Shown piece after piece: positions 3,205 to 62,399 of a DNA stretch of 64,000 nt (positions within the stretch are counted from its first letter, which is position 1; every line of letters begins with the position of its first letter). A model generated the notes under the pieces. That model saw only the letters and a list, made by a program, of their open reading frames with translations, did no database searches and was not told where the DNA came from. The stretch comes from Sphaerodactylus townsendi (taxonomy: Eukaryota), in assembly GCF_021028975.2 (NCBI RefSeq), contig NC_059438.1, positions 28,272,001-28,336,000 of the forward strand. The letters are read 5' to 3'. The position numbers and the translations under genes are program-made.

Positions 3205-3470
3205 AGAATGGTGTAGCAGTAAAGAGCAGGTGAACTCTAATCTGGGTTTGATTCCCTGTTTCTGCCACTTGAGCTGTGGAGGCTTATCTGGTGAACTCGA
3301 TTAGCTTGTGTACTCCAACACATGCCAGCTGGGTGACCTTGAGCTAGTCATAGTTCTTCGGAGCTCTCTCAGCCCCACCCACCACACAGGGGAAGGGAAA
3401 GAAGATTGTAAGCCACTTTGAGTCTCATGGGAGAGAAAGGGGGGATAAAAATCCAAACTCTTCTTCTTCT
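3205..3470 (+). mobile_element. Squam3-type tRNA-derived SINE
   Basis: ggtgtagcagtaaagagc...ctctaatctgg head, ctctctcagccccac body, (TTC)n tail; many similar copies in the window. Confidence 0.8.
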
Positions 3471-3619
3471 CAGTAGGGCTGGATTGTCAAAAAAAAGGGG
3501 GTAGGAAAAACCATGTATGCCCCCATGACTTCCTTGAAGAAAGGACAAATAGACTGATATGACTGATTAATAGCTAGCTGTGTAAAATGTAGATGTTAAA
3601 GCAGTGATAAAAGCATGTA

Positions 3620-4171
3620 CTTTATATACTTGCGTATAAGTCTACTTTTTCAGCACATTTTTGTGCTGAAAAAGCCCCCCCCTCGATTTATACGCGAGTG
3701 AGGGCCCCACTTAACTCTTGTGTGACGTTCCCCCTCTCCCGTCTTCACTCTCTCCTGCCTTCTTCTCTGCCTTCCCCTTTTCAGCTTTCTCTGCCTCTGC
3801 TTCGCTCTCCTCTGCCTTCTTCTCTGCCTTCCCCCTTTCAGCCACTTTCTCTGCCTCTGCCTTCTTCTCAGCGGCGGCCAGCCCCTGGCTCTCGGTGAGT
3901 GACAGCCAGTTGACCTGGGTGAGCTGGACAAGCTGCAGGATGGAGAGGTCGGTGGCAGAGACCTTGGGATTGGTGAGATGGGAGGGGGGGTCAGTGGCAG
4001 AGACCCCAAATAGTGCCCAACCATATCTATTTTTATTTTTGAAATTTGCCAGTAGCTGCTGCATTTCCCACCCTAGACTTATACTCGAGTCAATAAGTTT
4101 TCCCAGTTTTTTGTGGTAAAATTAGGTGCCTTAACTTATATTCGGGTCGACTTATACACAAGTATATATGG
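3620..4171. mobile_element. Tc1/mariner (Tc2/Tigger-like) non-autonomous DNA transposon
   Basis: TIRs tatatacttgcgtataagtc / gacttatacacaagtatata, TA on both flanks, internal subterminal repeats and a CT-rich low-complexity tract. Confidence 0.75.
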
Positions 4172-4528
4172 TAATTGGCTGCTAACTGTAAACAGCATGG
4201 TTTTTCTCCTGCTTTTTATTATTATCAGATTATCTGGGAAACAAAAAATAATCAGACAATGTAAATTGGGAGCTAAGAGAAATGAAGTGAAATTTAAGTG
4301 TAACAAAACTGAGAAAGTAAATAAAATATTTCAGGATAAAATGGAATTGGACAATCTAAGAATCTGGAAAAAAGAGGCAAAATGAGTGCGCGTGAGTCAG
4401 ACCAGCAGCTTTACAGAGCTTGGGGAGAAAAGCGGCAAGACCCATTCAATCACCACCTTCAAAGCTACAAAAATCCTGTGTTACAATAATAGGAACATCA
4501 ATCCCTACCAAGCAACCCGGTTGCTTAC

Positions 4529-4658
4529 AAATGTCACTTGCCCCAAATCCATCGAAGAGGGATGTCTTTCTGGCACGGCGTGGCTATCCTTTGGCTCCAT
4601 CCGACTTAAAAATTTCTGAAATATAGCTGACTCCAGTTTGAGAATGGAATAGGCATGG
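4529..4658 (-). CDS. CCDC113: CCDC113 coding exon 2 (HAYSILKLESAIFQKFLSRMEPKD...QVTF)
   Basis: Acceptor tcttttcag, donor gtaagc, 130 nt open in the correct phase; similar to mammalian NSALKTETEMFEKYYAKLEPRD. Confidence 0.88.
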
Positions 4659-5725
4659 CTGAAAAGAGATGACAGTTGATGTGAAGAAATTTAGCTGTTT
4701 GTATGCACTGTGTTCTTACAGAAACATGAGTGTTCTGTAGTTCAAACCAGAGGGATGCCAATGGTGTTCAAAACCCTCAAATGGCACACAGAATGCCTCC
4801 CAAGGCACTCCACTCCTTAGTGCAGTCATTATACCATAATAGCTTTCAGAGCACATTCAAGCTAGTAATGTAAGGTATGAATTTTACCTGGTTTCTCTAG
4901 GATGTTCTGTAAAATCTCCTAAATTATCTTAGAAAAATGCTAAAAATGGCAGGACTTTCCCCAATTTTTTTCCAACTTTGAAATATTTAAACACAATACC
5001 CTTCCTCAATTCTCTTTTGTCTCGGCCAGGATCCACTATGGGGCCATAGATTGTTCCCTTCTAGTCCCTGAAACAAGGACTTGCCACACAGATGTAATTA
5101 TCTGTTTTTCAGTTTCCAGTCCATAAAGTTAATAATTACGACTGAGTCCTACAATGAAAGTAACAGTTTAAAAAAATGATGTCCCATTCGTCATGTGAAT
5201 TCTTGTTTTGCTGCAATCAGTGACGACACCTTTGTGATTTCCTTTTTTCTCTTTTGGTGATTTAGATAATGTTCAAAAAATTAAGTATGTCACATAAAGA
5301 TTTTTCTTTCTCTGGTACCGCTAATGGGGACATGGGGTATCCCATATCCCCGGGCGCACGCTGTGGCCACCCACTGCTGAGCCTCACCCCCCTCCCGCTG
5401 AGCCTCACTCAGCAATTCTTGGTGAAATTATGGGGTGAAAAATTTGTAGGATCTGAAGAGAAACCACAGTATGATTCTTGGCAAAATTATGAAGATAATG
5501 AAGTGGATCTCCTTATAGCAATGCAGGTCAGCTTTGCGGCCAACCAGCATAAAGCTGAAATTTTGCCACTTAGCTCCCATTCCTGAATGGCTCATGGAAT
5601 CCAGCAAACTTCTTTTTTTAAAAGCAAGGAATTCTATGACTCATGCCTTGTTCAAAAGTGATGCTGGCTGAGGCAAAAAGAACTGGCCCTTGAAACTCTG
5701 ATGTCACACAGCACCTGAGCTTCTA

Positions 5726-5787
5726 CATGAGCAAAGAAGTGACACAGGTAACTAGCATGAGCAAAGAAGTGACACAGGTAACTAGCA
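5726..5787. repeat. Perfect 30-bp tandem duplication
   Basis: catgagcaaagaagtgacacaggtaactag x2. Confidence 0.9.
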
Positions 5788-6022
5788 GTGCACAGATGTG
5801 CCAAGTTGTTTTTGCCTCAGTCGGTGCCACTTTTCAACAAAGTCTCACAACTTTGTCTCTGTATGAAGGGCCGCTTTCCCTCAATTATTGAGCCACCCAC
5901 AACTTTCTTCCTCAACAGTTGTATGCAACATGGAAATTGCCTTCATTGTCAGAACATCCCCACCCTTTCCATAACATCCCAGTGTGATGCTGCTCTCTCT
6001 AAGTAAGCTGGAAACATACTGG

Positions 6023-6200
6023 GGAAGTCAGTGTGGTGCAGTGGTTAAGACTGGGATCAGGAGCATTCAGGTTCAAGCCCTCACCTTACTGTGAAGATAG
6101 GTGGGTGATTCTGGGCAAGTTGTTTTCTCTCAGCTTCAGCTACCTCACAAGGTTGTTGTGAGAATACAAGGAAAGGGAGAGCATGTAATGCAGGTAGGTA
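6023..6200 (+). mobile_element. Older Squam3-like SINE followed by an (AG)n microsatellite
   Basis: gtgtggtgcagtggttaaga head, cctcacaaggttgttgtgag body. Confidence 0.6.
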
Positions 6201-6834
6201 CAATGCACAATACAGAGAGAGAGAGAGAGAGAGAGGAAGTAATAGTGAGCTTGAGGCAGATGGGAGATAAACGTGGTAAATAGATAACGGTGCGCTGGAT
6301 CCAATGAGCAAAAGGAGTTAAACGTGCAATAGCAAGAAGTAACAGTGCACCAGAGAGTAAGAATGTACTAGCTAGCAAGGAGCAGAGGTGCCCAATAGCC
6401 CATGCTAACAGACTTGGAGAAAAATGTCCTCTCCCTTTAATAGAACATGCGGCGTTTTTTACTATTATTATTTACTCATTTGTGTGTCCATAAAGTGCTT
6501 CAAGTCGCAGCTGACATATGGGATTTCCAGGCAAGAGATTAGCATTCCTTGGTGGGCTCCCACCCAAATACTAACCACTAACCAGGACTGATCCTGTTTA
6601 TGAAATCTGAAGAGATCGCTAGCCTGGATCATCCAGGTCGAGACTCTTGCATGATTCTCCTCTTCTCCGCTTTATCCTCACAACAACCCCATAAGGTAGG
6701 CTAGGCTAGGAGCTGTGTGATTGTCCCCAAGTCGTCCAGCAACTTCTCTCAGAATCTAGTCCGACACGCTCCCCATTACAACTGGACGTTTTGGGTGGCG
6801 TGGAGATCCACAAACCCCCCGCTCGGCCGCCCAC

Positions 6835-6980
6835 CTCAACTCCTGCACTGTACTGCGGAGCTCGAACAGGGAGAGCGGGGCCAAGTCCTGGAGGATCTCT
6901 TCGCCCAATTCCCTCGACTCCCCCGTATAGATGCTGCCGCGGTCCGACTCCTCGTCCGTCAACAAAGGGCGGCTATCCAT
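6835..6980 (-). CDS. CCDC113: CCDC113/CFAP263 coding exon 1 (MDSRPLLTDEESD...STVQEL)
   Basis: ATG at 6980-6978; TDEES..L...V.EL resembles the mammalian N-terminus MTDDES...VEELS; donor AG|GTGGGC; phase 2 matches exon 2. Confidence 0.85.
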
Positions 6981-7093
6981 CTTTCACCCGCGCCTTCGGA
7001 CGATGCCCGTGTCCGTCACGCGTTTGGCACGTCCCCACGTTACCGAGTTGGTGCCAGCAGCGCCGGGAAACACCCAACGCGGTCCAGCAAAGC

Positions 7094-7107
7094 GTTGCCA
7101 TGGCGCC
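7094..7107. promoter_or_regulatory. RFX X-box-like site GTTGCCATGGCGCC
   Basis: 12/14 match to GTTGCCATGGCAAC, about 115 bp upstream of the ATG of the ciliary gene CCDC113. Confidence 0.65.
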
Positions 7108-7298
7108 GGTGGGTGGGCGGGGCACTGGAGCAGGCGGTGGGTCGGTTGCGCGCGCAGCAGCAGGAGACCTCCGGCGCTGAGAGGGTCACTGCGCCCGCGC
7201 GCGGGCCGGTGGGCGAGTTGGTTGCGCGCGCAATCCGGAGGAGTCTTTTGACGCTCAAAGGATGGGGAACGGGCGTGAGTGCTGGAGGGGCGAGCTAG

Positions 7299-7796
<498 letters not shown>

Positions 7797-8036
7797 TAAG
7801 CAGAAGAAGGGGCGGGCGGGCTCTCCCCCCGGGGCCGGGGCTGCCTCCTTTCAGCCGACCGGCCCCCAGTGGGCGCGTGCTCCAGTGAACCGGCTCTTCC
7901 TTCCCGAGCTTGCAGGCTCTATTTTCTGCTCCCCGCCCCGAAATGTTGCATTCGCACAATTGCACCTTCTGCTTCCTCTTTCTGCCCAGGCAAAGGGAGC
8001 TCCACGGCTGGATGCTGGGAGGAGGCCGCGTCGATG

Positions 8037-8067
<31 letters not shown>

Positions 8068-8439
8068 CGGGCCGTGGTTTCTAATGCCTTGTTTGTGGGC
8101 TCTCCAGGGCAACGGGTTGTGTGTGAAACAAAAGGTTGGACCGGGTAAAAAACAGGGGTTTGAGTATCGGAGTTTGACAGTGCAATTGTAGTACCGTAGC
8201 ACTGTCCTGGGAGTGAGGCCCAATAATAACATGGGAGTAACTCCAGATTAGACCTATTTAGGATGTCGCCCTTAAAGCCCCAAGGGGCTGTGCCTAAACT
8301 TGGCATTACTGTTCCGGTATCTAAGAAAGATCTGACCTGAGTATCTCAGTAAATAATAGAGGATTCGCCACTTTGTGGAGAAAAAGGAGGTAGAAAGAGC
8401 CTTTTGTTTCTCTCCCACTGGTGTGCCCAGTGAAGTGGA

Positions 8440-8780
8440 TGGGTGACTGATTCATGATGGATGAAAGGAAATTCTTCTTTACTCAACAATTAATTAAATT
8501 GTAGCATTCCCTTTTAGTGGATGTAGTGATGGCTTTGATCATAGAGTGGGGTTAGTCAGGTTCATGAAGGACAGGCCCAACCATAGCTGGTAGCCAGAAT
8601 GCGTAAGCGGAATCCCCATGTACAGAAGTAGTCAATCTCTGATTACAAGTTCCAGGAGGCAAAATTGGGAAGGCTGCATCTTCTGTGTTTTGACTCTTCA
8701 AACTGGATCACAGTGTGAGACAGGATGCTAGACTAGATGATCACTAGTCTGATCCAACTGGGCACTTCTAAATATTTCTG
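8440..8780 (+). mobile_element. Degenerate CR1 3' end
   Basis: aaaggaaattcttctttactcaac...gatgtagtgatggc...tagtctgatcca resembles the 3' end of the young CR1 at 51.8-52.1 kb. Confidence 0.65.
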
Positions 8781-9574
8781 GGATGAGATCTTCAGTCAAA
8801 TGTGAGGCAGGTCAGTATGTTTCTAACAAGGGACAAATTTTGCAATAGCATTACTTTGGGTCTCAACTTTAACTTCTTTTTTTGCACCCATTCACAATAA
8901 TTAGTATCAGATCATGTGGGAAAGACCTCTTTGGCTGGGGTGAGCCCTTTTGTGGAAAAAGAGATCCAAGGCACACACTTAATGCTTCTGCTTGTTGGCA
9001 GAAATGAATGCATCAGTTTAGAGCCGTGGCATACAGCCTGAAAGCATACCTATAAGATTAAATGTTATTAGTTTCTTTGAATTCCTTTTTGTATCTGAAC
9101 CAGAGTGGCAGTTGGATTGATCTGGACTTTGGAAATAGGTAGTGCTAATTAGGAATGTTATCCTGTGACTGGTTAGGGAGCAATTTATCCTTCCCTGTTT
9201 TCTTGTTGGGATGTTTGTAGGAAAGGGAAGAGGAAAAAGTCTCATGTAGAGAATTGTCTTCCTCACCCAAGGGCTGTGAGGGAGAAACAGGCACACCACC
9301 CCTAACATGTATTTCAGAACATAAGTCAAGGCAGATGTCGACTGGTTGATTTAAAGGACTCTGGCAGCTGTTGGCAGATTTCCTGATCTCATGGTTACAG
9401 ATGGATAGCACGTGTTCAGAATTCTTAGCTCGGATGATTTTATTTTTTTATCTCCTCCCCTGCATCTGGTATAATACTGAGATGGTAGCTACGAAGACTC
9501 TTCTATCTAGCAATCAATGGAGTGTGGTGTTGAAGTAAATCTCACTGGTTCTCCCACATCCGGAAAGAATCTAA

Positions 9575-9805
<231 letters not shown>

Positions 9806-10559
9806 TAAAGTTGTATAATCTTTCCTACAGCTGAGTAATAGATCGTTCTTACTATTCTAATTTGTAACCATTTGAACTTTTAAATCTAGAATGGGAGTTG
9901 GGCCACTGAATTTTATCTCTGTTTTTTACTGATCTTTTGGCAATCATGTTCCCTCCCTTTGTGTCTTGGAAAACTAAAACTGGAATGAAATCCTTTTGTG
10001 AAGGAACAACATCATGCCTTGTTTTTGAATAATATCACATATACTGATACCATGCAGTAAAATAGTGAATGGTAGAGCCTACTGGGCGGAATAGATATTA
10101 AGTTATGTGAATAGTAGTACAAAGCCTGTAGGGGAATTATTCCATTAATTTTTTTGATGATTTGCATTATCCTGGCAAGAGCTGTGTCATAGTGACTACC
10201 TGGATGGATTTTGAACAAGCATGTTTGAATGTTGCTATTGGTAGTAAAGCAGTACATGCTAATGTTAGTCAGCTTACCTTAAAATTAGGTGGGAAGCATA
10301 TTTATCACTGTATTGCATTTGGTCTCACAGCATTTTAACAGGATAACAGTTTAGTGGCACGTTTAAAAACTAACAAAATTATTGTGGTATATGCTTTTGT
10401 GAGTCAAATCTGTTTTTTTTTTTAAGTGCATGAAATGTAACAGCCAGTTGGCAGGGAGAAGGGGAGAAATATCTGAAGTAGCTAACAAGAGAGGGGTGGG
10501 GGGATGTGGTGGTTACATCAAGAAGAGGCTAGAACATTATCTCAGGATGCATATCGGTG

Positions 10560-11330
10560 GTCTTAAAGTTGCAGGGCACAGATGAAAATAAGATCCAGTC
10601 AAAAGAATAAGTGGCCATAGTCTGGGCATGGATTACTAAAGCCCAACAGTTCTTGAATTGGCAAAGTAGGATAAATCCGAGTAGTGTGCATAAACCTGAA
10701 AAGAATAATTGCTTTCTGCAGTATCTTCGTTTTTAAATGACTTGTCTTTTATCTTTTTTGCGTATAGACGTGAGTTTGCTGAGTTAATTGCTGAAGGGCA
10801 TTGCTAGTTCATGATAGCATATATTACATTAAAATATGTACAGGTGAATGAGCCAGTGGCAATACAATGAGTGCTGTAGTATTGTTGCTAGAGTAGGTGT
10901 GAGAGATGTGGGTGGGGCTGGTTGTCCCTTGTTTCTTTGCTGGGAGGTCTGTTAATGCTGTAAATTAGTTGTTCAGGTTGGGAGTCTGTAAAGCAAGACC
11001 AAGACTGCTCTCTGAGGAGGAAGGGATGGTCTTCCAGAAGTGACTATGTGTCTCTGATGATGCACTGAAAAGATTCCAGGACTGGGCCTTAGGTGATAAA
11101 CGGTAGCAATCCATTACATTTTATGCTAGGGCTGTCCTGTGGAAGAGGACTCTTGGGTTCCGACCTAGCCTTGTACTGTACTTTAATAAATGTTGGATGT
11201 AAATCCTACATAAGCCTGTCTATTTCTGTGCCATCACTCAGAACTAAAGTTTGCTGCAATGTCTTCTGAAAGAACTCCTCCTAAGTCTCAGTTGGTGGGC
11301 TATGTATCTGAAATGAAGCTTCATTTGTTC
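10560..11330 (-). mobile_element. Degenerate Penelope-like element (RT C-terminus / GIY-YIG region)
   Basis: Minus strand reads gtaatatatgctatcatg...caatgcccttcagc (VIYAIM..QCPSA), typical of Penelope GIY-YIG; heavily disrupted. Confidence 0.55.
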
Positions 11331-12714
11331 TTGGCTCCTGCCTTGTGAGAATGAGCTATGAGCAAAGAAGCCACACCTCAAATCTCACAGCCACCATGAA
11401 TCAGTGGGTGGGCTTAGGCGCGGAAGCAACATGCACTGCCAGACCGAAGTAGAAATGCAGTTCTTCACGGCTTCAATAGTCCTGTGTAAGGTGAGGATGT
11501 TTGTCAGTTGGGCACCTGTTATTTTACCAAGGAACGTCTGTTGGAAGAATTATAATTAACTCCCTAATCTTACCTTGCCTTGATCATTGGTTCCACTTTT
11601 CCAGGTAGTACTATGATAATCAAGGAGCAGCTCGAATTAGTGAATAGGAAAAGGGATGCTATCCTGAGCCTCTTGGAGGAAAAGCAGAGCAACAGTGTGA
11701 TAGGTAGTAAATTCTGTGTTCGGGAGCGGAGGATCTGTGTGGTTGCCACCTCCCATATGGAGACCAAACAGTAGTTAAAAATGCACATTAACATTTAAAC
11801 TTTTTTTGCATTTGCAGTGGCATACTGGGCATATTCAGTAGTCCTCTTGTCTGAAATGCTGCTAGTACATCAGCAGTTCATAATAAGTTGGAAGGTCCTG
11901 ATGCTTCTCCAAGGCCAGCCTTTGTGCCCTTGATGGAAGGTGCCGGAGCTCTGTGTGCGCGTTGGTTTTCCTCAAAATATTTTGCAAGAGTAACATGCTT
12001 ATCTTGACCCAGCCAGTGTAGAGCAGCTACTTACAAGGGGGAGGCTCTTGTGAAACGTGACACACAGTTAACTTCCTGGGTTTGATGTGATTCTGCAGTT
12101 TTGCTACTGTCCTGATTCTGTGTGCTGTATTGCTAAATCAGAGGGTTGCACATTTTAACGAAGCAACGGAGGGCAGCATTTAAGGCATTAGTTTGTGTTG
12201 TGGAGTTCCTCAAACCACTAAGGCAGGGCTCTGCTCCAAGGAGCTTACAGTCTGGTCTTTCAGTCAGGAGAGATGACAGAGAGGCCTAATGTAAGGGAGG
12301 CCAGGGCTGTGGCAGCTGTTCCATTGAATTTGTATTTTTAAAGCACTGGAGTCTGTGCAGAGCCAACATTTACAACCCTTTGAGAACTTTGCTGTCGGTG
12401 TCTCCTGGGTATACAACATGCCCTATGTATGATATTTTATTGGATAACTCTTAGCATAAGTTGCATGCATCTTACTGGGAGCAGTCCCCATTTAACACGG
12501 CTTACTTTCTTAATGCTCTGAGCTAGTCTTCAAGCAAGCAAATATAATTTCTAAAGATAATTTTTCTAATTGATTTATGTGCGTAGTCAACCCAGACTTC
12601 CATTTCCCAAGTTTTCTTCAGAGGTTTTTTTTTGTTTATTTATTTTCCCCATGTTTTTGCTATCAAGTTGCAGCCTGCAGGGTTTTCAGGGCAAGAGACA
12701 ATCAGATGTGGTTT

Positions 12715-12833
12715 AGCATAGTCTGCCTCTATAGTGTCCCTGGTATTCCTTGGTGGTCTCCCATCCAAATACTGCCCAGGGCTGAATCTGCTCAGCTTCT
12801 GATATCTGACAAGATCTCCCAACCTGGGCTATC
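12715..12833 (-). mobile_element. 5S rRNA-derived SINE fragment (similar copies near 6545-6640 and 18830-18930)
   Basis: ggtctcccatccaaatact...cagcttctgatatctgacaagatc is the reverse complement of the 5S internal promoter region, diverged. Confidence 0.75.
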
Positions 12834-12836
12834 TAG

Positions 12837-12954
12837 GGCGGATTCCGCATGGGCCAAAAACAGCGGTGTGCAAACTGTGTGAAATGGTTTAAAATGGTGT
12901 AAAAGGGTTTACACCGTTTTCACACCACTGTTTTTGGCCCATGTGGAATCCGCC
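12837..12954. mobile_element. PIF/Harbinger-like MITE, 118 bp
   Basis: About 34-bp TIRs ggcggattccgcatgggccaaaaacag..., 3-bp TSD TAG on both sides. Confidence 0.85.
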
Positions 12955-13739
12955 TAGGTTTGGGCTACTCAGTCTATTGAAGGTTCTAAACAACCTCTCA
13001 GCACTTTTTATGTAACTGCCATCGTGCCTTTTGACATAGTAATAGAATGTAAGACATGCACAGCACCCACATAGTGGATATAGCATGATTATCTGACCCA
13101 AAAACCGTCATCAGTAAGCAGGGGGATTCAAAGGGGAAGACAAATGCCATCGCACTCTGCAGCCTGCCTTTCTTATTCCATCTACACCTTTCCCTCCCTT
13201 CCTTGTGCTTTCCCTCACTTGCTCTGACTCTCATTCTTCAGCCCCCCTTTCTTTTATTAGTTTCTATTTTCTGCTCTTAGTTCTCCTCTCCACCTACCAG
13301 AGTCCCTGTGTCTTCTTCCCTTTCCTAACCCAGTTTCTGCTTTTAACCCCTGCAAAATAGTTTAAAAGTGCAAAGAACTTTGAACACTGTCTTGCGAGAT
13401 CATGGCTGCCATTTTGAGTTGTGCAGGTGATTGGTGTCTGGAGCATACTATTCAAACCCAAAATGGTAGCTGTAACATAGTCTTGCAGGATATTTTCACC
13501 TTTAAACCCACCCTCCCACCCCTTTGATTTTAAGATTTTTCTGCAAACTTAGAAGTTTTTCTGGTTTGCAGAAATGTCTGTTCTAGCGTTGGGTGCCTCC
13601 ATTTTGTGGATTTTGCAATCCATGTGGTGGGACCACCCATTGCTGTTAGGTAGATATATTGCATTTATTTTATAATATTTAAATTCAGCCTTATCTCCTC
13701 AAATTCAAGTAGCTAGCAAAGAAGCAAGTTGTAAATGCA

Positions 13740-14900
13740 TAAAAACAGTTCATCCACCAAATGTCCTCTGAAATTGCACCATTTTGCAATCCTTCTTGAA
13801 TGCGCTAAGTGAAAGTACATTCCACACCCACATTGGAAGGACTGGACATAGCACAGAAAAATCCCACAACCTGATTGTTGCCAGATGGGCAATCCTAAAA
13901 GAGGACACTACAAGGAGAAAGTTGTCTGAAGAACATGGCCGGTACAGGGGAATATACCAGGAGATATGCTGCAATAAGTATGAGATTCCTAGGCTGAGAA
14001 TGTGATAAACATCAATTTGAATTTAGCCTGGAAGTAAATACAGAACCAGTACAGTTGACACCATGGTGAAGTTATATATTCCAAGCAATTGACGGAATTT
14101 TCACTGCTGTGTTTTGTGCTAATCAAAGCTTCCGAGATTCCTTCTTACAATAGTCCAGTCTGGAGTTTAATAGTAGCATAGAAAAGAACAGCTCAGTTCT
14201 AAGGGGGAGGCAGTTTGCAAGGAACATGTAACTCAAAGAAGGTACCCTTAGCAACAGCTTATTTATCCATTGATGCATCTGGGTCCATGGGCACCCGCAA
14301 ATTCTTAGCTAAAGTTCTCTTTAATAGACTGTTAATCCTGTACCAACCAAACACTCTGACTTCCCAGCCTCTGAACATATCTTGCCTTGAAATCCCTACC
14401 GGGGCTGCCATAAGTCAGATGTGACACAAAAATAATAATGAAATAATAATTTAAAAAATTACTCTTGCTTAAATTTTAGCCAGAGATCATAATCCAAGAC
14501 CAATAGTGATGTTCTAGTCCTGATGCCAGACTGAAATGAACCAAAATTAGTAAAAAAAATTAGTCAAAATCCAGAAAAATCAGGGGTTATTTTCCTGTAA
14601 CCTGCTCTGTCACCTTGTTCCAAAAGGGGAGAGTGAGCGCAAGTCAGCACATTCTGGGTACCCAAAGATGATTTCTCAAAGAAGTCTAATCACATCTTCT
14701 TTCAGCTGTGAAGGGAATACCCTTTGGGAGAACAGCATATTAATCTTCCTTTGGAGAGTTTCCAGTTTCTCCCAGCACTGTTTTAATAGTCAGGATGGCA
14801 AGGATCCAGTATAAGGTAGTTGCTTATACTGCTACTGATGCGTTGGGTCATGTTAATGTTTTTGAGCCGCTGTAAATAATGCAAGATCTTCCTCGAGTCA
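13740..14900 (-). mobile_element. Degenerate L2 LINE
   Basis: Minus strand ctccagactggactattgt (SRLDYC) and an L2-like 3' region; many stops. Confidence 0.55.
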
Positions 14901-15964: not shown

Positions 15965-16439
15965 AGCGGATTCTGCACAGGCCAAAATAATTGTTGTTGG
16001 CCTGGTAAAAACACCAGTTGGGGGAGGGGAACTTCTCATGGCTGCCACCTCCAAATTGAGGCAGTGCTGCTCTCCCCCTTCAATGGTGTTTTCTTGACTC
16101 GCCAAATGAGCGAGTCTATTGGCACTGTGTGGACGCTGCTGTTTTCTGGCACACTGCATTTTTTTTACAAACTTACCTCCTCGTCCCTGCATAGCTCCGT
16201 CAGGACGAGGGGACACGACCCCTGCTCCAACCGCCCGGGCCATTGCCAGGGCCATGAGGGCATGTCCCCTAATCCTGACTATGCAGGGACGAGGAGGTAA
16301 GTTTGTAAAAAGCAGCGGTGCACCTCGTGGAGAGGAAGCTTCGGGGCTGCTCGCGCACACGTGTGCGGACAGCCCCAGACCAGTGCCGATGTCATGCACA
16401 CCGGTGCCCCGCCGCTCCCGGGCCCATGCAGTATCTGCC
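15965..16439. mobile_element. PIF/Harbinger-like MITE, 475 bp, with an internal perfect 33-bp inverted repeat
   Basis: TIRs gcggattctgcacaggcc / ggcccatgcagtatctgc related to the 12837 MITE; TAA TSD at 15962-15964 and 16440-16442. Confidence 0.8.
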
Positions 16440-46399: not shown

Positions 46400-47110
46400 G
46401 ACAAGACCCGAAAGGAGTTCACAAAGCGACCCTTCCGCTAGGCTGGACCAGGCCTGAGGGAACCGACGGTGCGACCACCAAGCCACGCCCTCAGTCCCCT
46501 CTCTCATGCGTACTGTTCTCTATTGCGCCTGCGCGTTTGAATGAGCGAGGCCTTCTCCGTGGCGACCCAGAGCGATGCGCCAAGGGGGCGGGGTCCTGGC
46601 AACGGACTCCAGCCAGCTCTTTCGCCAGCCTCCCCGTCGCCTTGGAAGCACGCACGCGTCGCGACAACACTCGCCGGGGGAACGAGTTCCGGCAGAAAAA
46701 TAGTCCGTTCCGGGGCAGCGGCTGCTGGTGGCGTTGTGACGGGGAAGCGGAGCGGTCTCGGTTTTGTTCGGCAGTGCGCACGCGTCCGCGTCTCCTTCCG
46801 CGCGGCGCCTGAGGGCTGAGAGCGAGACGGCCGCGCTCGGCGGCAGCAGCAGCCCGCGCGGAGCCACCCCCTCGGCCCGGCTTGGCTCGGCGGGATGTTC
46901 AAGAACACGTTCCAGAGCGGCTTCCTGTCCATCCTCTACAGTATCGGGAGCAAACCGCTGCAGATCTGGGACAAGAAGGTGGCTGTGGGGGGGCGGGGGC
47001 GGGAACCGTGGTCTCCGTTAGCTGCTGCTGGAAAACAAGTTTCTGTCCCTCATGAAGGTTGTGGCGGGGGGCTGGGGGTTGTTGCCTCAGTTTCCTCCTG
47101 GCGCGGCTTT
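46400..47110 (+). promoter_or_regulatory. CFAP20 CpG-island promoter with NRF1-like site (46524-46534) and several degenerate X-boxes
   Basis: CpG-dense; TGCGCCTGCGC; TTCTCCGTGGCGAC, CCTGGCAAC, GTCGCCTTGGAAGC, GTCGCGACAAC. Confidence 0.8.
46895..46978 (+). CDS. CFAP20: CFAP20 exon 1 ([28 protein letters not shown])
   Basis: Invariant CFAP20/BUG22 N-terminus; 84 nt. Confidence 0.98.
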
Positions 47111-57230: not shown

Positions 57231-58164
57231 CTCATAAATGTACCTGTGGATCTGGTTGCCATTCTTTTCTCTGGAGATTGCAAAGGAGGACAAATTGTTT
57301 AACTGTATCTGTTGTTCTTGAACGTCCTTGTGACAGTTGCTGGTTATCCTGCAGGATGGGCTAAGAGAAGATCTGGGTAGGCAGATGCTGTTCTCCCCCC
57401 CCCCCCTAAACACTGTATGACCATGCTCCTCGACTCCTTGAAGCTGGCAGAGACACCAAAAGGATCCTCATCATAGATGACCACTTGAAGAGCATAAGCT
57501 ACAGGTGAGCAGCCTGTTCTTTTAAGAAGGAAATGGATTGTACTACTTCTTAGTCTCCGTGCATCACACAGATGTGCTTTGCACCTGTGCCAAGCTACAA
57601 CTTGGAAACCTCTACAGTTGCGCTTTTAGGTGCCAGTTTAGATGATGCACATGCAGACAGAAAAGGAGTCACATCTTATTCAGCTCCTTTGAGTCTGCTG
57701 CAACAGCAGCACTGTTTAGGAACTTCTCCAGAGCTATCTTCTTCGGAGCCAATTTTTCATGCAAATTAAGACATATTTTGCATGGACGTGCTTCAACTGT
57801 TGGGGCCAGTTTCTTAATTTGTTCTATAGCCCTGTCTCTTATGGAAAAGGATTTTGGATAGATGAACATCCAGGAATACCAATACAAGAAGGTTTCTTTT
57901 GGACCCAGGGTTTCTGGGAAAGGGAGGAGATCCCTGGGATGAAGAGAAACCGGGGTGGACAAAACTGATATAAATCTGCACTTCCTGGGACTGAAAAAAG
58001 ACCTATATAGTCTACCACAAAGCTGTTCCCAAAAGCCCCCCTCCCACACCAATGTAGAGTCTCTGGCATTCACTGACAGAGCAACTCAACTTTGCTAGAT
58101 TGGTCTCTTCCCTCTGTTTGCAGGAAAAGCAGAATTCTGCAGGCATCTGTTCCTGGCAGGGAAA

Positions 58165-58495
58165 ACTTATTTATATTTTATTTATTTATTTATTACATTT
58201 ATATACCGCCCTCCCCTGAAGGGCTCAGGGCGGTGAACATGAATATACAACTAGAGCACAAAATAAAATCAATAAATCTCAGATCATTAAATAAATCATA
58301 GTAAATGGCTCTATAGTCTTTGAATCATTAAAACCCCATTAAAAGCAGCGTATTAATATCAAATACAATAAATAATACAATAAGAGGCGACCTACTAACC
58401 AATCCCCTAAAAGAGGGGAGGGACGGCAGGATCCACAGATGTTAACGGGGGGGGGGGGCATCAGCGGCCAGCCTCCCCAAAAGCCTGGCAGGCTG
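58165..58495 (-). mobile_element. L2-type LINE 3' end (similar copy near 39650-39860)
   Basis: (TTTA)n tail then tttatataccgccctcccctgaagggctcagggcgg. Confidence 0.6.
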
Positions 58496-58871
58496 AAGGT
58501 TGGCTGGCTGGTCGGTTTTGGCCCAGGCCATGGAAGCAGCTGCAAGGAGCAGAATGGCAGCAAGAGCCTTCCAATACTTATGCTTTTCCACAGCTTCAAA
58601 TTCAGAAACCACAACCAAAGTGCAAATGATGTGCAGTGCCAGAATGATTGGCAACCTCTGTTGTTCCTCTGGATGCCTGCAGGGGTTGCTCAGGGGCGTA
58701 AGGAGACAAACTGGAGCCCTGGGCAAAACCTGAGTTGGATGCCAGCCCCCAAGGGCGGCCACCCCATCACAACCCCCCAATTTTTTTTTACGCACCAGGT
58801 CATTGGTGCCTGCAGGGGATGCATTTTTAGACATATCTGCACCAAAATGACATATCAGCACAAAGAATGCT

Positions 58872-59790
58872 GCTGGGGACGCCGCTGCCCTCCAGTGGCC
58901 AAAGGTGTGAATTACAAGCGCAACACACACCTCAACCCACGCGGCATTTCTCAGGTTATAGTTGCTATAATGTGGCGAATCGGGGCCTCTTTGAGCAGGG
59001 CAGCCCGTTTGGGCAATGCAGCTGAGAGCCCTTCGCACGAGGCCCCAGGTCGAGGCTGTGGCGTGTCCGAGCCTCTTTGGGCAGGGGAGCCGCTGGGATG
59101 CTGCTGCCCTCCAGTGGCCAAAGGTGTGAATTACAAGCGCAACCCCTGGCACCCACCACGCGGCATTTCTCAGGTTATAGTTGCTATAATGTGGCGAATC
59201 GGGACCTCTTTGAGCAGGGGAGCCGCTGCGGAGGGCTCCCCGAGAGCGTGGGGACGCTTCCCGAGTTTTTGCTGAGACCACGCTAACCCGCTCCGAGAGC
59301 GTTGTAACGCTCGCCGAGACAGCTCTAACACTCTCCAAGAGCGTGGTAAGGCTTTTCCCGAGAGCGTTGTAACGCCTCCTAGACCGTGCTAACCTTCTCC
59401 GAGAGCGTGGTAAGCCCTCCCGACAGCGTTGTGACGCTCCCGAGACCGCGCTAATGCGCCCCAGAGAGCGTTGTAACGCTTCCCATGAGCGTTGTGACGC
59501 TCTCCGAGAAGCGTTCCCACGCTCTCAGGGAACACTCCGCAGTGGCTCCCCTGCTCAAAGAGGCCTCGATTCACCACATTATAGCAACTATAACCTGAGA
59601 AATGCCGCGTGGGTTGGGGTGTGCGCTTGTAATTCACACTTTGGCCACTGGAGGGCAGCGGCGTCCCCAGCGGCTCCCCTGCCCAAAGAGGCTCGGACAC
59701 GCCACAACCTCGACGTGGGGTCTCGTGCGAAGGTGGCGCCCTAGGGACTCTCAGCTACATTGCCCAAACGGGCTGCCAAGCTCAAAGAGG
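58872..59790. repeat. Composite CpG-rich repeat: 219-bp direct repeat, about 280-bp inverted arms (58986-59263 / 59505-59790) and a 21-bp minisatellite spacer
   Basis: Directly visible: gctgccctccagtggccaaaggtgtgaattacaagcgc at 58884 and 59103 and its reverse complement at 59622-59659; spacer units ccgagagcgttgtaacgct.. Confidence 0.93.
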
Positions 59791-59799
59791 TCTGGGAAG

Positions 59800-60300
59800 A
59801 TAGCGTAATCACCCCATAACATCCACGTGCGGTCTCGTGCGAAGGCGGCGGTCAGCGTGGCGTGGTCCAGGGGAGGGACGGGGGGAGCACTGTGGGGCAG
59901 ATTCTCCTCAGCTGCGGCACCCCATCAGGACGTGCGGGGGAAGGGGGGTCCCGGGGGAGCCAGGCCAAGTTGGGGGGGGGCATTTGAAGCCAATGATGGG
60001 ACCCCTCCCTCCCTCCCTCCCCGTCGCCTCCGGGGTGACGAGTCCCGAGAGAGCGCGCCGATTGGGCCGCCGCCTTTCCTCCTCCTCCTCCCGCTTGATT
60101 GGCCGGCGGGCCGTAAAGGCGGAAGCGTTCAGGGGGGCCCGTGAGCGAAGCGGCCGGCGGGGAGAAGGAGGAGGGGGCCCTTCTGCAGGGTCGTCGTCGT
60201 CGGTGGGGGGACTCTGGCCGCCCTCCCTCTCTCCCTCGCTGGCCCTGATGGACGGGGAGGGGCTGTCCGTCGCTGCCTGCTTTTCTATGCCAGGCAAGTG
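59800..60300 (+). promoter_or_regulatory. CpG-island promoter and probable first exon of an unidentified gene
   Basis: CCAAT at 59990, ATTGG at 60061 and 60098, GGCGGAAG (ETS-like) at 60118, candidate donors at 60294/60298. Confidence 0.6.
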
Positions 60301-60351
60301 AGGCAGACAGAAATGAAGCAGGCAGATCCTGACAGCTCAGTTGGTTCGTTC

Positions 60352-60352
60352 G

Positions 60353-60384
<32 letters not shown>

Positions 60385-60386
60385 CC
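60352..60386. repeat. (GCCT)n microsatellite
   Basis: About 8 tandem GCCT units. Confidence 0.9.
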
Positions 60387-60469
60387 AGGGCGGAAGGCCA
60401 GAGGAATGGATCCAGTGGGATTTCAGAATGCTTTGGGGGAGAATATGAATGGTAACTCTGGAGGGAGGG

Positions 60470-60935
60470 AAGAAGAAGAGTTGGTTTTTATAACCCGCCA
60501 ATGTGGTGTAGTGGTTAGGAGCAGCAGACTGTCATCTGGAGAACTGGATTTGACTCCCTGCTGCTTCACATGAGTGGCTGACTCTAATCTGGTGAACTGG
60601 GTTTGTTTTCCCTGCTCCTCCACTGAAGCCTGCTGGGTGACCTTGGGCTAGTCACAGTTCTCTCAGAACTCTCTCAGCCCCACCTGCCTCACAAGGTGCC
60701 CCTTGTGAGGAAGGTGATTGTAAGCCCCTTTGAGGCTCCTTAAAGGTAGAGAAAAGTCTTGAAGCAGCTTACCTTCCGCTCCCTGCAAGAGGCACCTTGT
60801 GAGGAAGGTGGGGCTCAGACAGTTCTGAGAGATCATTGACTAAGCCAAGGTCACCAAACAGACTTCATGTGGAGGAGGGGGGGGGATCGAACCTGGTTTT
60901 CCAGATTAGACTCTGCCACTCTTAACCACCACACT
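60470..60935. mobile_element. Two Squam3-type SINEs, a plus-strand copy (about 60500-60760) nested in a minus-strand copy
   Basis: (GAA)n tail at 60469, then tgtggtgtagtggttagg head on +, then minus body and head ending cttaaccaccacacta. Confidence 0.75.
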
Positions 60936-62399
60936 AGGTTGGCTTTCTGGCTCCACCTTGGACTGCTGTTAAATGTTCAGGGGCAGAGACGTAAGATTTC
61001 AAGACATTTTGAAGTAGTCTTCCAGATCCTTTTGGAAACAATGGAAATTGGGGAGGGGGGTGGGATTGAAATATGCATAATACTGATTAAATCCTAACTT
61101 ACATTTTCTGTTTGAACTAACATAATATCAATAATTTATGTGGCAACATATAAAATTGTGCTACACATCATCTTTGGGGAGAGGGAGAGAAAGAGGGCAA
61201 GACCTATCCCGTTAAAACAGATACAAAGGGGAAAAATTGAAATAGGTTGGAAACAGGAATCAAATTTTGCAGCAAATAAAGGAGACAGTATCATTTGGAC
61301 AGACGTGGTCTCATACCTAACAGTATTTACTCAAATGCAAGACAGGCTTATTTTCACAGAGATGCAATAAAAAAGTGGAGAACAATCTTACATTGTTCCA
61401 GGCATATATAATTATTCTGTTTTTTCTTTGTGTATAACATTTTTAAGGGGATGGTCTTGCATGCAATGCCATGTTCCTTTAGAAGAAACGGAGCATTTGG
61501 AAATCAAGCTGAATTTTGTCAACAATGAAAACACAACGAACCCTTCAATGACATATCATCATCATAGCATTCTTTGTATCAATTGTGAACAAAATTAGCT
61601 ACGCGTGAACAATAAACACATCCTTGAAATTGCATAGGTTTATATTATGTACTGCATTGATCATTGCTATCATTATTTGCTTGACTAGGGATACCAGCCC
61701 CCAAGTGAGATTGAAGGATTCCCTGGAATTGCAGGTCATCTCTACACACACACACCCGCCCCCGCCAGTGGCCACGGAGGACCAGGAAACCATATTTGCC
61801 TCAGCAAAAATGTTAACACTACGTGTTTCAACTGAACATAATCTTGCCTAAAAACTGTTCTCTCATTCCAATAAAGGGAGGGTTTGTGGGGAGGTATCTG
61901 TCCCCAATTTCCAATTTTCCCGTTTCAGGAAGTACTCTCTTTTCTCCAGAGGAGTCTTTTTTCCCCACACGGACCTTACTTCACATCTGTACTCAGACAA
62001 TAAACTGGATTGCACCCAAGTATCCATTGCCACTCCCTATCAAAGCCCTGGTCCACTGTTCATAGAGCACCTGAAAAGACAGGTTCCAAATCAAAAAGAA
62101 AACATCACAGATACCTCTGAAGTGACTGTGACAGCCACGAGAAAGGCATATTCTGCATTACTGAATCTCTTTCAGCCCAATTTTTCAGAGTAGTTTAGAA
62201 TTTGACAGCACTTCAGTCGAGGTCTTCCCCTCCTTTGTGACGGTGATTCATTTATTAACTGGGTGGGGTTTTTTGCATAATTCTTAACTGATCAGATTAT
62301 CTGATCCAGTCTGACTGGCGCCATCTTGTCATTTTTTTCATGGCTAGTTTTGGACTGATGCCGACAGGATTCTAGGGGCTGCAAATGCGGCCAGCTACA

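What the first reader, a model, noticed from the sequence alone, without database searches (positions are those of the whole stretch)
58872..59790. CpG-rich ~800-bp palindrome built from a 219-bp unit, upstream of an unknown promoter
Seen: arms 58986-59263 and 59505-59790 are high-identity reverse complements around a ~240-bp spacer, and the left side carries an extra partial direct copy at a 219-bp period. CpGs are largely retained, unlike neighbouring repeats. I see no TSD, ORF or tail that would make it a known transposon. Inference: a locally built, probably unmethylated regulatory element that could extrude a cruciform or, if transcribed, form a ~280-bp dsRNA hairpin (endo-siRNA or ADAR substrate).
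Basis: partly seen in the sequence, partly recalled or inferred. Interest (0 to 1): 0.8.

Follow-up and report, generated by a model that had tools for sequence, protein, structure and literature searches.

The report
Repeat-family foldback beside CpG-rich block
The 0.9-kb palindrome is real, but its building blocks occur in roughly hundreds of copies in this gecko and two relatives, so it is most likely an old foldback-type mobile-element relic and not a device built at this locus.

Summary
Arms 58986-59263 and 59505-59790 are reverse complements: 93% identical at aligned bases, 86% counting gaps. A 219-bp-period direct copy on the left is 90% identical. CpG o/e is 0.67-1.23, against 0.07-0.19 in the flanks.

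Three things are new.
- The ~240-bp "spacer" is an array of about 11.5 copies of a 21-bp unit that is itself a small palindrome.
- The arms consist of modules (A ~137 bp, B ~90 bp) whose summed contig depth is about 120-470 times single-copy depth in three related geckos. At 59791, 59806 and 59923, 25-37 distinct contigs share a letter that this copy lacks. The modules therefore belong to a multi-copy family.
- The multi-copy signal runs on into the adjacent "promoter" block, to about 60,200.

An independent contig from a second species spans the whole centre, so this is not an assembly artefact. A third species also carries the locus.

One RNA run shows almost no reads over the centre. I found no TSD, terminal TIR, ORF homolog or Rfam match.

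The "locally built" reading is contradicted. Hairpin potential and CpG retention are real, but no function is shown.

The scan earlier noted a similar CpG-rich foldback elsewhere in this genome (s1-746392). Whether it is the same family was not tested.

The parts
58869..59005 (+). Module A1, the outermost unit of the left arm. Its left edge is cut off inside the B/A junction. It carries a CTCF-like motif on the minus strand at 58884.
   Evidence: 90% identical to A2 and 93-95% to A'.
59006..59094 (+). Module B of the left arm.
   Evidence: I3: 59030-59097 is 96% complementary to 59666-59733. Alignment. Most family contigs carry an extra G after 59094 (table 4).
59095..59224 (+). Module A2, the direct repeat of A1 at a 219-bp period. 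CTCF-like motif on the minus strand at 59103.
   Evidence: D4 and I1.
59225..59263 (+). Module C, the inner end of the left arm. It is already a unit of the 21-bp type.
   Evidence: D1 (reference copy 59237-59264) and I1.
59264..59504 (+). Centre: a tandem array of about 11.5 copies of a 21-bp unit (GAGAGCGTT..AACGCTCTC, itself a palindrome) with a 64-bp higher-order period. The array is direct and so has a polarity. CpG o/e is 1.23.
   Evidence: (D1-D3). Depth is only 6-9 times baseline. X4 record 10 spans 59222-59571 with 3 mismatches.
59505..59543 (-). Module C', the inner end of the right arm.
   Evidence: I1.
59544..59674 (-). Module A' of the right arm. CTCF-like motif on the plus strand at 59645.
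   Evidence: (I1, I2, I6).
59675..59793 (-). Module B' followed by the short end piece of another A-type module.
   Evidence: I3 and I4.
59794..59850 (-).
   Evidence: D8 (85% to 59698-59738) and I9. One family contig shows B-type units in tandem (table 5c: 59850 joined back to 59770).
59851..60200 (.). CpG-rich promoter-like block with CCAAT at 59990, ATTGG at 60061 and 60098, and CGGAAG at 60120. It is also multi-copy. The right limit of the multi-copy signal lies between about 60175 and 60286.
   Evidence: depth 4,282-10,737 against a baseline near 31; 29 contigs share G at 59923; depth 6,182 at 60107; paralogous contigs X4 record 12 and X5 record 19; only 1 contig at about 3 times baseline at 60287. 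Motifs.

Best explanation
The stretch 58869 to about 60200 is one old, rearranged copy of a CpG-rich, modular, multi-copy repeat family shared by at least three closely related geckos. The copy is laid out as a foldback. Two oppositely oriented arrays of A (~137 bp) and B (~90 bp) modules flank an array of a 21-bp palindromic unit, and the right arm runs on into a promoter-like CpG block. The most likely origin is a non-autonomous foldback-type DNA transposon: long, internally repetitive inverted arms, a non-coding middle, and a left arm cut off at 58869. Shown here: the palindrome, the module plan, the multi-copy nature of the arms, the presence of the centre in a second species, and the absence of coding capacity. 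Inferred: that the inverted layout is the family's own plan and was delivered by transposition. Its high CpG content is best read as a property of the family plus its position inside a 1.5-kb CpG-island-like block. No regulatory or RNA function is shown.
For: The palindrome and its modules are documented. For multi-copy status, single-copy flanks have depth about 31 (X1), 5-8 (X4) and 40 (X5). The arm bins read 3,731-14,525, 199-1,133 and 3,384-12,372, while the centre reads only 177-285, 18-38 and 161-392. At 59791, 59806 and 59923, 25, 37 and 29 distinct X1 contigs carry one and the same other letter. Twelve contigs carry an extra G after 59094, which means the B/A2 junction, and so the 219-bp period, is a family feature. 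Paralogous contigs about 10-11% diverged were laid on 59107-59265, 59057-59251, 59765-59914, 59948-60091 and 60007-60174. The arms differ from each other by 7%. That is similar to or slightly less than the 10-11% between paralogs, as expected for the two arms of one insertion of about the family's age. The structure is real and old. X4 record 10 spans 59222-59571 with 3 mismatches. X5 contigs cover 59453-59573 with 4 differences, about 2%, matching flank divergence. There is no coding capacity and no RNA family match. Foldback transposons with about 220-bp tandem repeats inside long TIRs and a non-coding middle are documented for Tetris (PMC4079207).
Against: No target-site duplication and no matching outer termini were found. 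The only candidate is an 8-mer, AGAATGCT, at 58864 and 60425. It has roughly a 1-in-10 chance expectation and no TIR beside it. The left arm ends abruptly and has no promoter-like block. The centre array is at only 6-9 times baseline, so most family copies either lack this centre or carry a version less than 80% alike, and I could not see whether other copies are foldbacks. Summed contig depth is a rough proxy for copy number. It cannot tell dispersed copies from tandem, satellite-like ones. No Dfam, Repbase or whole-genome search was available.
Confidence: 0.5

Rival explanations
1. Local fold-back duplication. A one-directional family copy (21-bp array, then C, A and B modules, then the promoter-like block) sat here first. 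The hairpin-prone 21-bp palindromic array then caused replication template switching or fold-back repair, which copied the neighbouring modules in reverse to make the left arm. The modules are dispersed, but the palindrome itself was made here.
For: The centre array is direct and polar (64-bp higher-order period over 59293-59509), so it belongs with one arm. Its depth is 6-9 times baseline against 120-470 times for the arms, so most family copies may lack this arrangement. The left arm is short, has no promoter-like block and no continuation to the left. No TSD or termini were found. The arms are slightly closer to each other (7% different) than to sampled paralogs (10-11%).
Against: The left arm is not a simple mirror of the right. 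Reading outward, the left is A2-B-A1 and the right is A'-B'-B''. A' resembles A1 more than its mirror partner A2 in the variable segment. Earlier unchecked notes of this scan report other CpG-rich foldbacks with repeat cores in this genome, which hints at a family-level plan.
Confidence: 0.3
2. A functional regulatory element. The block would be a hypomethylated CpG-island-like promoter or insulator, exapted from repeats. Three CTCF-like sites point < < >, and the promoter-like block fires rightward.
For: CpG o/e is 0.77 over 1,477 bp against 0.07-0.19 nearby. Fifteen of 21 CpG columns are kept in both arms, and CpG sites changed only about 2.5 times as often per site as other sites. CCACTGGAGGGCAGC, one mismatch from CCASYAGRKGGCRSY, occurs once in each A module and nowhere else in 58000-61000. 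CCAAT, ATTGG and ETS-like motifs lie at 59990-60125. A few RNA reads match the species-specific allele at 60287 with no other difference.
Against: The motifs come with a multi-copy family, so their presence here needs no selection. Divergence between species in the centre (about 2%) matches the flanks, so no extra constraint is visible. RNA depth is low (2-8 reads), unstranded, and could come from paralogs. Unique sequence to the right (61016-61800) has almost no RNA. No methylation, accessibility or binding data were available.
Confidence: 0.12
3. A source of hairpin RNA: the palindrome is transcribed as a dsRNA of about 280 bp that feeds endo-siRNA production or ADAR editing.
For: The predicted fold is very strong.
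Against: In the one RNA run laid, depth over the low-copy centre is 0-0.4, and the few reads on the arms can come from any of the family's copies. The strong fold follows from DNA-level palindromy. No small-RNA data were available.
Confidence: 0.04
4. An assembly artefact, such as a false fold-back join.
For: Palindromes are a known artefact class in long-read data (PMC12870357, title and abstract only).
Against: A Logan contig from a different organism and study (X4 record 10, 351 nt) spans 59222-59571, covering the inner ends of both arms and the whole centre, with 3 mismatches. X1 record 5 and X5 contigs also cover the centre.
Confidence: 0.03

Closest known systems
Tetris foldback transposon of Drosophila virilis (PMC4079207)
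   Same: Non-coding. Long inverted arms contain tandem repeats of about 220 bp. The middle domain is variable and non-coding. Many copies are rearranged or fragmentary. The modules are also found outside complete elements.
   Different: Tetris is an insect element. It has a defined outer flanking domain of the TIR and 8-10 bp TSDs, and neither was found here. It has no CpG-island-like composition and no promoter-like block. There is no sequence relationship; the likeness is architectural only.
Drosophila FB and Galileo elements, with long internally repetitive TIRs (from my own knowledge and the abstracts of PMC3573991 and PMC4168063)
   Same: The inverted arms are built from tandem subrepeats, arm length and structure vary between copies, and the elements can form hairpins.
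   Different: Galileo encodes a P-type transposase, and FB copies have TSDs. No transposase, termini or TSD are seen here, and the host is a vertebrate.
CpG-rich foldback repeats noted earlier in this genome by this scan (s1-746392; also s1-743037, s1-740236)
   Same: The same genome. A palindrome of about 1 kb with CpG-rich, promoter-like arms around a phased repeat core, and arms reported as multi-copy in this gecko and relatives.
   Different: Those are AI notes that I did not check. Whether it is the same family is unknown.
Palindromes made by fold-back (template-switch) inverted duplication at short hairpin-forming repeats (from my own knowledge)
   Same: A short palindromic array sits exactly at the axis of a larger inverted duplication.
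   Different: That mechanism yields arms that are identical at first and strict mirrors. Here the arms differ in module order at their outer ends.

Membership tests
Foldback-type DNA transposon (FB/Tetris-like) | Long inverted arms containing tandem subrepeats | tested here: met
   Arms of about 280-390 bp are built of A and B modules, with a 219-bp direct period on the left and a 112-bp period on the right.
Foldback-type DNA transposon (FB/Tetris-like) | Non-coding or variable middle domain between the arms | tested here: met
   A 241-bp array of a 21-bp unit, with no Pfam or homolog hits.
Foldback-type DNA transposon (FB/Tetris-like) | Multiple copies in the genome | tested here: met
   Arm depth is about 120-470 times baseline in three organisms, and 25-37 distinct contigs share family letters. 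Dispersed and tandem arrangements were not distinguished.
Foldback-type DNA transposon (FB/Tetris-like) | Target-site duplication (8-10 bp in Tetris) flanking matching outer termini | tested here: not met
   The TSD plus TIR scan found nothing credible. There is only an 8-mer at 58864 and 60425 with no TIR beside it. The left arm is cut off, so an old or damaged copy could have lost these features.
Foldback-type DNA transposon (FB/Tetris-like) | Other copies of the family share the foldback plan | not testable with these tools
   No whole-genome search was available, and the single read-laying run lists only the best-supported joints.
hAT or other TIR MITE | Short terminal inverted repeats with a TSD of fixed length | tested here: not met
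SINE or LINE (retroposon) | A tRNA, 7SL or 5S head, or an ORF; a 3' tail; a variable TSD | tested here: not met
   No tRNA, no Rfam hit, no ORF homolog, and no A-rich or simple-repeat tail at either edge.
CpG-island promoter of a gene | Single-copy CpG island with a transcription start and a downstream spliced transcript | tested here: inconclusive
   The composition fits, as do the CCAAT and ETS-like motifs. But 59851 to about 60200 is multi-copy, and RNA depth is only 2-8 with none in unique DNA to the right. No gene was identified.

The most novel reading that the evidence does not exclude
Geckos might carry a family of foldback elements whose arms bring a CpG-island-type promoter block (NF-Y and ETS motifs) and one CTCF-like site per module, and which resist CpG decay. 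Such a family would act as a portable seed of orphan CpG islands and paired, oppositely oriented insulator-like sites. This copy, 3-5 kb downstream of CFAP20, would be one that is still hypomethylated and weakly transcribed.
Probability: 0.12. Interest if true: 0.6.

Novelty: new member of a known kind. Interest (0 to 1): 0.27.

Why it matters
For this locus the result is deflationary. A striking CpG-rich palindrome next to a promoter-like island is explained by multi-copy repeat modules, so it should not be treated as a purpose-built regulatory hairpin.

One wider point may deserve a genome-wide look. A 1.5-kb block that meets CpG-island criteria, including its CCAAT and ETS-like "promoter", is largely repeat-derived, and each A module carries a CTCF-like motif. 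Together with other unchecked notes of this scan, this suggests that repeat families in this gecko spread CpG-island-like and CTCF-like sequence. That would affect how CpG islands and promoters are annotated in squamate genomes.

Tried and rejected
- **Other copies in the window:** blastn with word sizes 11 and 9 found none for the palindrome or the promoter-like block. Only the flanking SINE recurs.
- **Left arm beyond 58869, and hidden TIRs:** local alignments scored no better than shuffles. The TSD plus TIR scan was negative.
- **Coding capacity:** six ORFs, including 278 aa and 298 aa on opposite strands, have no Pfam match. The long ORFs are a by-product of GC-rich repeated modules.
- **Fetching paralogs through spurious ORF translations:** the 96-aa ORF found nothing. 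The 298-aa ORF had 0 hits among 1.84 billion representatives.
- **RNA families:** Rfam at E up to 1 gave nothing in the palindrome, only four weak chance hits elsewhere. No tRNA-like head was found.
- **Exact 22-mer of module A in JGI metagenome contigs:** 0 hits. This was expected and is not informative.
- **Earlier notes by sequence:** blank.
- **Literature:** no paper holds 'gecko', 'foldback' and 'transposable' together.

Full report

Yes. The repeat finder and blastn both find the inverted arms at the stated places. The match is 58986-59263 against 59790-59505, 86.3% over 292 columns, E = 2e-83. A Smith-Waterman alignment gives 252 identical of 271 aligned bases (93%), with 22 gap columns, mostly one 13-bp indel. 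The ungapped blocks are 91-97% complementary.

The extra direct copy on the left is 58876-59005 against 59095-59224, 90% identical, with a start-to-start spacing of 219 bp (D4). Folded as one strand, 58869-59860 gives -704.7 kcal/mol. Dinucleotide shuffles give -391 +/- 7, so z = -43.6.

CpG observed/expected:

| Region | CpG o/e |
|---|---|
| Left arm | 0.67 |
| Centre | 1.23 |
| Right arm | 0.83 |
| Repeats on either side | 0.16 and 0.07 |
| Unique flanks | 0.18-0.19 |

There is no TSD plus TIR pair, no ORF with a Pfam domain, and no tail.

**2. Anatomy, refined**

The arms are modular.

- **Left arm, 5' to 3':** A1 58869-59005, B 59006-59094, A2 59095-59224, C 59225-59263.
- **Right arm, as reverse complements:** C' 59505-59543, A' 59544-59674, B' plus the end piece of an A-type unit 59675-59793, and a diverged further B-type unit B'' 59794-59850.

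A and B end in the same ~35-bp motif (D5).

The "spacer" 59264-59504 is a tandem array of about 11.5 copies of a 21-bp unit with a 64-bp higher-order period. The commonest unit is itself a 9+9 palindrome (GAGAGCGTT..AACGCTCTC). The array is direct and therefore has a polarity, so it is not itself mirrored about a centre.

A' resembles A1 more than its mirror partner A2 in the variable middle segment. The two arms are therefore not a simple fresh mirror copy.

The left arm stops abruptly at 58869, inside a B/A junction. Nothing to its left resembles the right-hand continuation.

**3. Are the units local or repeated elsewhere?**

No whole-genome search was available, so I laid public data on 57800-61800 at 80% likeness or better. 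The data were Logan contigs of three organisms and one RNA run.

- X1 (organism A) matches unique flanks almost perfectly, so it is the same species as the window or nearly so.
- X4 (organism B) differs by about 0-2%.
- X5 (organism C) differs by about 2-3%.

Summed contig depth by region:

| Region | X1 | X4 | X5 |
|---|---|---|---|
| Single-copy flanks | ~31 | 5-8 | ~40 |
| Arm bins | 3,731-14,525 | 199-1,133 | 3,384-12,372 |
| Two centre bins | 177-285 | 18-38 | 161-392 |

The arms are thus about 120-470 times baseline, and the centre about 6-9 times.

Summed contig depth is only a rough proxy for copy number, but independent signs agree with it.

- At 59791, 59806 and 59923, 25, 37 and 29 distinct X1 contigs carry one and the same letter that this copy lacks.
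- Twelve contigs carry an extra G after 59094. The B/A2 junction, and hence the 219-bp period, is therefore a property of the family and was not made at this locus.
- Individual contigs about 10-11% diverged were laid on 59107-59265, 59057-59251, 59765-59914, 59948-60091 and 60007-60174.
- One contig shows B-type units in tandem (table 5c).

The arms are therefore members of a multi-copy family, in the order of hundreds of copies, shared by three related geckos. I cannot say whether those copies are dispersed or partly tandem.

**4. The "unknown promoter"**

The multi-copy signal does not stop at the palindrome. Depth is 4,282-10,737 over 59810-60211. At 60107, inside the CCAAT/ETS-like motif cluster, it is 6,182. 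At 60287 a single contig sits at about 3 times baseline. The promoter-like block, to about 60,200, therefore belongs to the same multi-copy stretch as the right arm.

Its motifs are CCAAT at 59990, ATTGG at 60061 and 60098, and CGGAAG at 60120.

CFAP20 lies upstream on the + strand, with its start codon at 46895 (motif search from memory, a lead only). The block is therefore downstream of CFAP20 and is not its promoter. I could not identify any gene served by it.

**5. Real structure or artefact, and how old?**

X4 record 10 is a 351-nt contig from another organism and study. It spans 59222-59571, covering the inner ends of both arms and the entire centre, with 3 mismatches and 1 gap. X1 record 5 and X5 contigs also cover the centre. 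The fold-back junction is therefore real and predates the split of these species.

X5 differs from the window at 4 positions in about 190 bp of the centre (about 2%), the same as in the unique flanks. No special constraint or acceleration is visible.

The arms differ from each other by 7%, against 10-11% between sampled paralogs. The structure is therefore about as old as the family's spread, or a little younger.

**6. Transcription**

The one RNA run laid was X15, from organism C, unstranded in practice, with about 6% of the run read.

- Depth over the low-copy centre is 0-0.4.
- Depth on the arms is 0.6-8, and those reads can come from any family copy.
- Depth over 59944-60479 is 2-5 per mate orientation.
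- Depth is about 0 in unique DNA on both sides.

Three reads match organism C's own allele at 60287 with no other difference, so there is a little transcription at or near this locus. Nothing supports a long hairpin transcript. This is one sample of unknown tissue, and absence there is weak evidence.

**7. CpG retention**

Between the arms, 15 CpG columns are kept in both, 5 have decayed to TG or CA in one arm, and 1 changed otherwise. There are 13 transitions and 6 transversions overall. By my own arithmetic on these counts, CpG sites changed only about 2.5 times as often per site as other sites. That is far less than is usual for methylated vertebrate DNA (my own knowledge).

The sample is small, but it fits long-term low methylation of the 1,477-bp block 58869-60345 (GC 63%, o/e 0.77). 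Methylation itself was not testable.

**8. What it most likely is**

My best reading, at about 0.5, is an old, damaged copy of a non-coding foldback-type mobile element. It has long inverted arms made of tandem modules, a non-coding repeat middle, and a family in many copies. The closest described architecture is Tetris of Drosophila virilis, a foldback transposon with about 220-bp tandem repeats inside its TIRs and many rearranged copies (PMC4079207). The likeness is architectural only. The defining TSD and outer termini were looked for and not found, so I do not file it as a proven member.

The main rival, at about 0.3, is that only the modules are repeated. On that reading, the inversion was made here by fold-back or template-switch duplication seeded by the hairpin-prone 21-bp array. 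The polar, low-copy centre and the short left arm favour this. The non-mirror module order argues somewhat against it.

A selected regulatory role as a promoter or insulator (about 0.12), a hairpin-RNA source (about 0.04) and an assembly artefact (about 0.03) are less likely, for the reasons given under each rival.

**9. Relation to earlier notes of this scan**

All of these notes are unchecked leads. A similar 1.26-kb CpG-rich foldback with promoter-like arms and a phased repeat core was followed up on another piece of this genome and likewise assigned to a multi-copy family (s1-746392). Whether it is the same family is not known.

A second first-stage note on my own stretch (s1-758277) reports three CTCF-like motifs in < < > orientation. 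I confirm them: CCACTGGAGGGCAGC, one mismatch from CCASYAGRKGGCRSY, lies at 58884(-), 59103(-) and 59645(+), once per A module and nowhere else in 58000-61000. Since the A module is multi-copy, the motif's presence here needs no local selection.

**10. Verdict**

This is a new member of a known kind of structure, of modest interest.

One caveat applies. The genome-wide habit of repeat families carrying CpG-island-like and CTCF-like sequence in this gecko may deserve a proper survey.

Noticed in passing
window 58164-58487: This 324-bp stretch is absent from organism C: X5 record 18 joins 58163 to 58488 with 5 other letters between. It starts with a (TTAT)n run, has multi-copy depth, and is flanked by the direct repeat CCTGGCAGG. 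It looks like a lineage-specific SINE-type insertion on the minus strand.
   Followed up: partly
window 60503-60910: Two fragments of a tRNA-derived-looking SINE lie in opposite orientation. Summed depth is extremely high, up to about 9 million against a baseline of 31. Other copies in the window lie near 3242, 18135, 31703, 45762 and 57018. ARAGORN finds no intact tRNA.
   Followed up: partly
window 58488-58868: This repeat abuts the left arm, and its depth rises from about 300 times to about 14,000 times baseline towards 58868. That profile is expected of 5'-truncated LINE-type copies. CpG o/e is 0.16, in contrast to the palindrome next to it.
   Followed up: no
window 58884, 59103 (minus strand) and 59645 (plus strand): One CTCF-like motif, CCACTGGAGGGCAGC, sits in each A module in < < > orientation, with none elsewhere in 58000-61000. 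This is the same observation as the separate first-stage note s1-758277.
   Followed up: partly
window 58439-59338: ORFs of 278 aa (+) and 298 aa (-) overlap on opposite strands across the left arm. Neither has a Pfam match or any homolog among 1.84 billion representatives. They are a by-product of GC-rich repeated modules and not genes.
   Followed up: yes
window 58864-58871 and 60425-60432: The 8-mer AGAATGCT occurs just left of the palindrome and again about 1.55 kb to the right. It could be a TSD of hAT-like length, but there are no matching termini, the chance expectation is about 1 in 10, and 60200-60424 is not multi-copy.
   Followed up: partly
window 60240-60303: An ATG at 60249 opens a short frame that ends at a possible splice donor (CAA|GTGAGG at about 60297), just beyond the multi-copy block. 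A few clean RNA reads cover 60287. It could be a first exon driven by the repeat-derived promoter-like block. No joint was listed.
   Followed up: no
window 6701-8100, 16201-16400 and 46401-46900: These are other CpG-island-like blocks in the window. The last is at the CFAP20 start. None resembles the block studied here.
   Followed up: no
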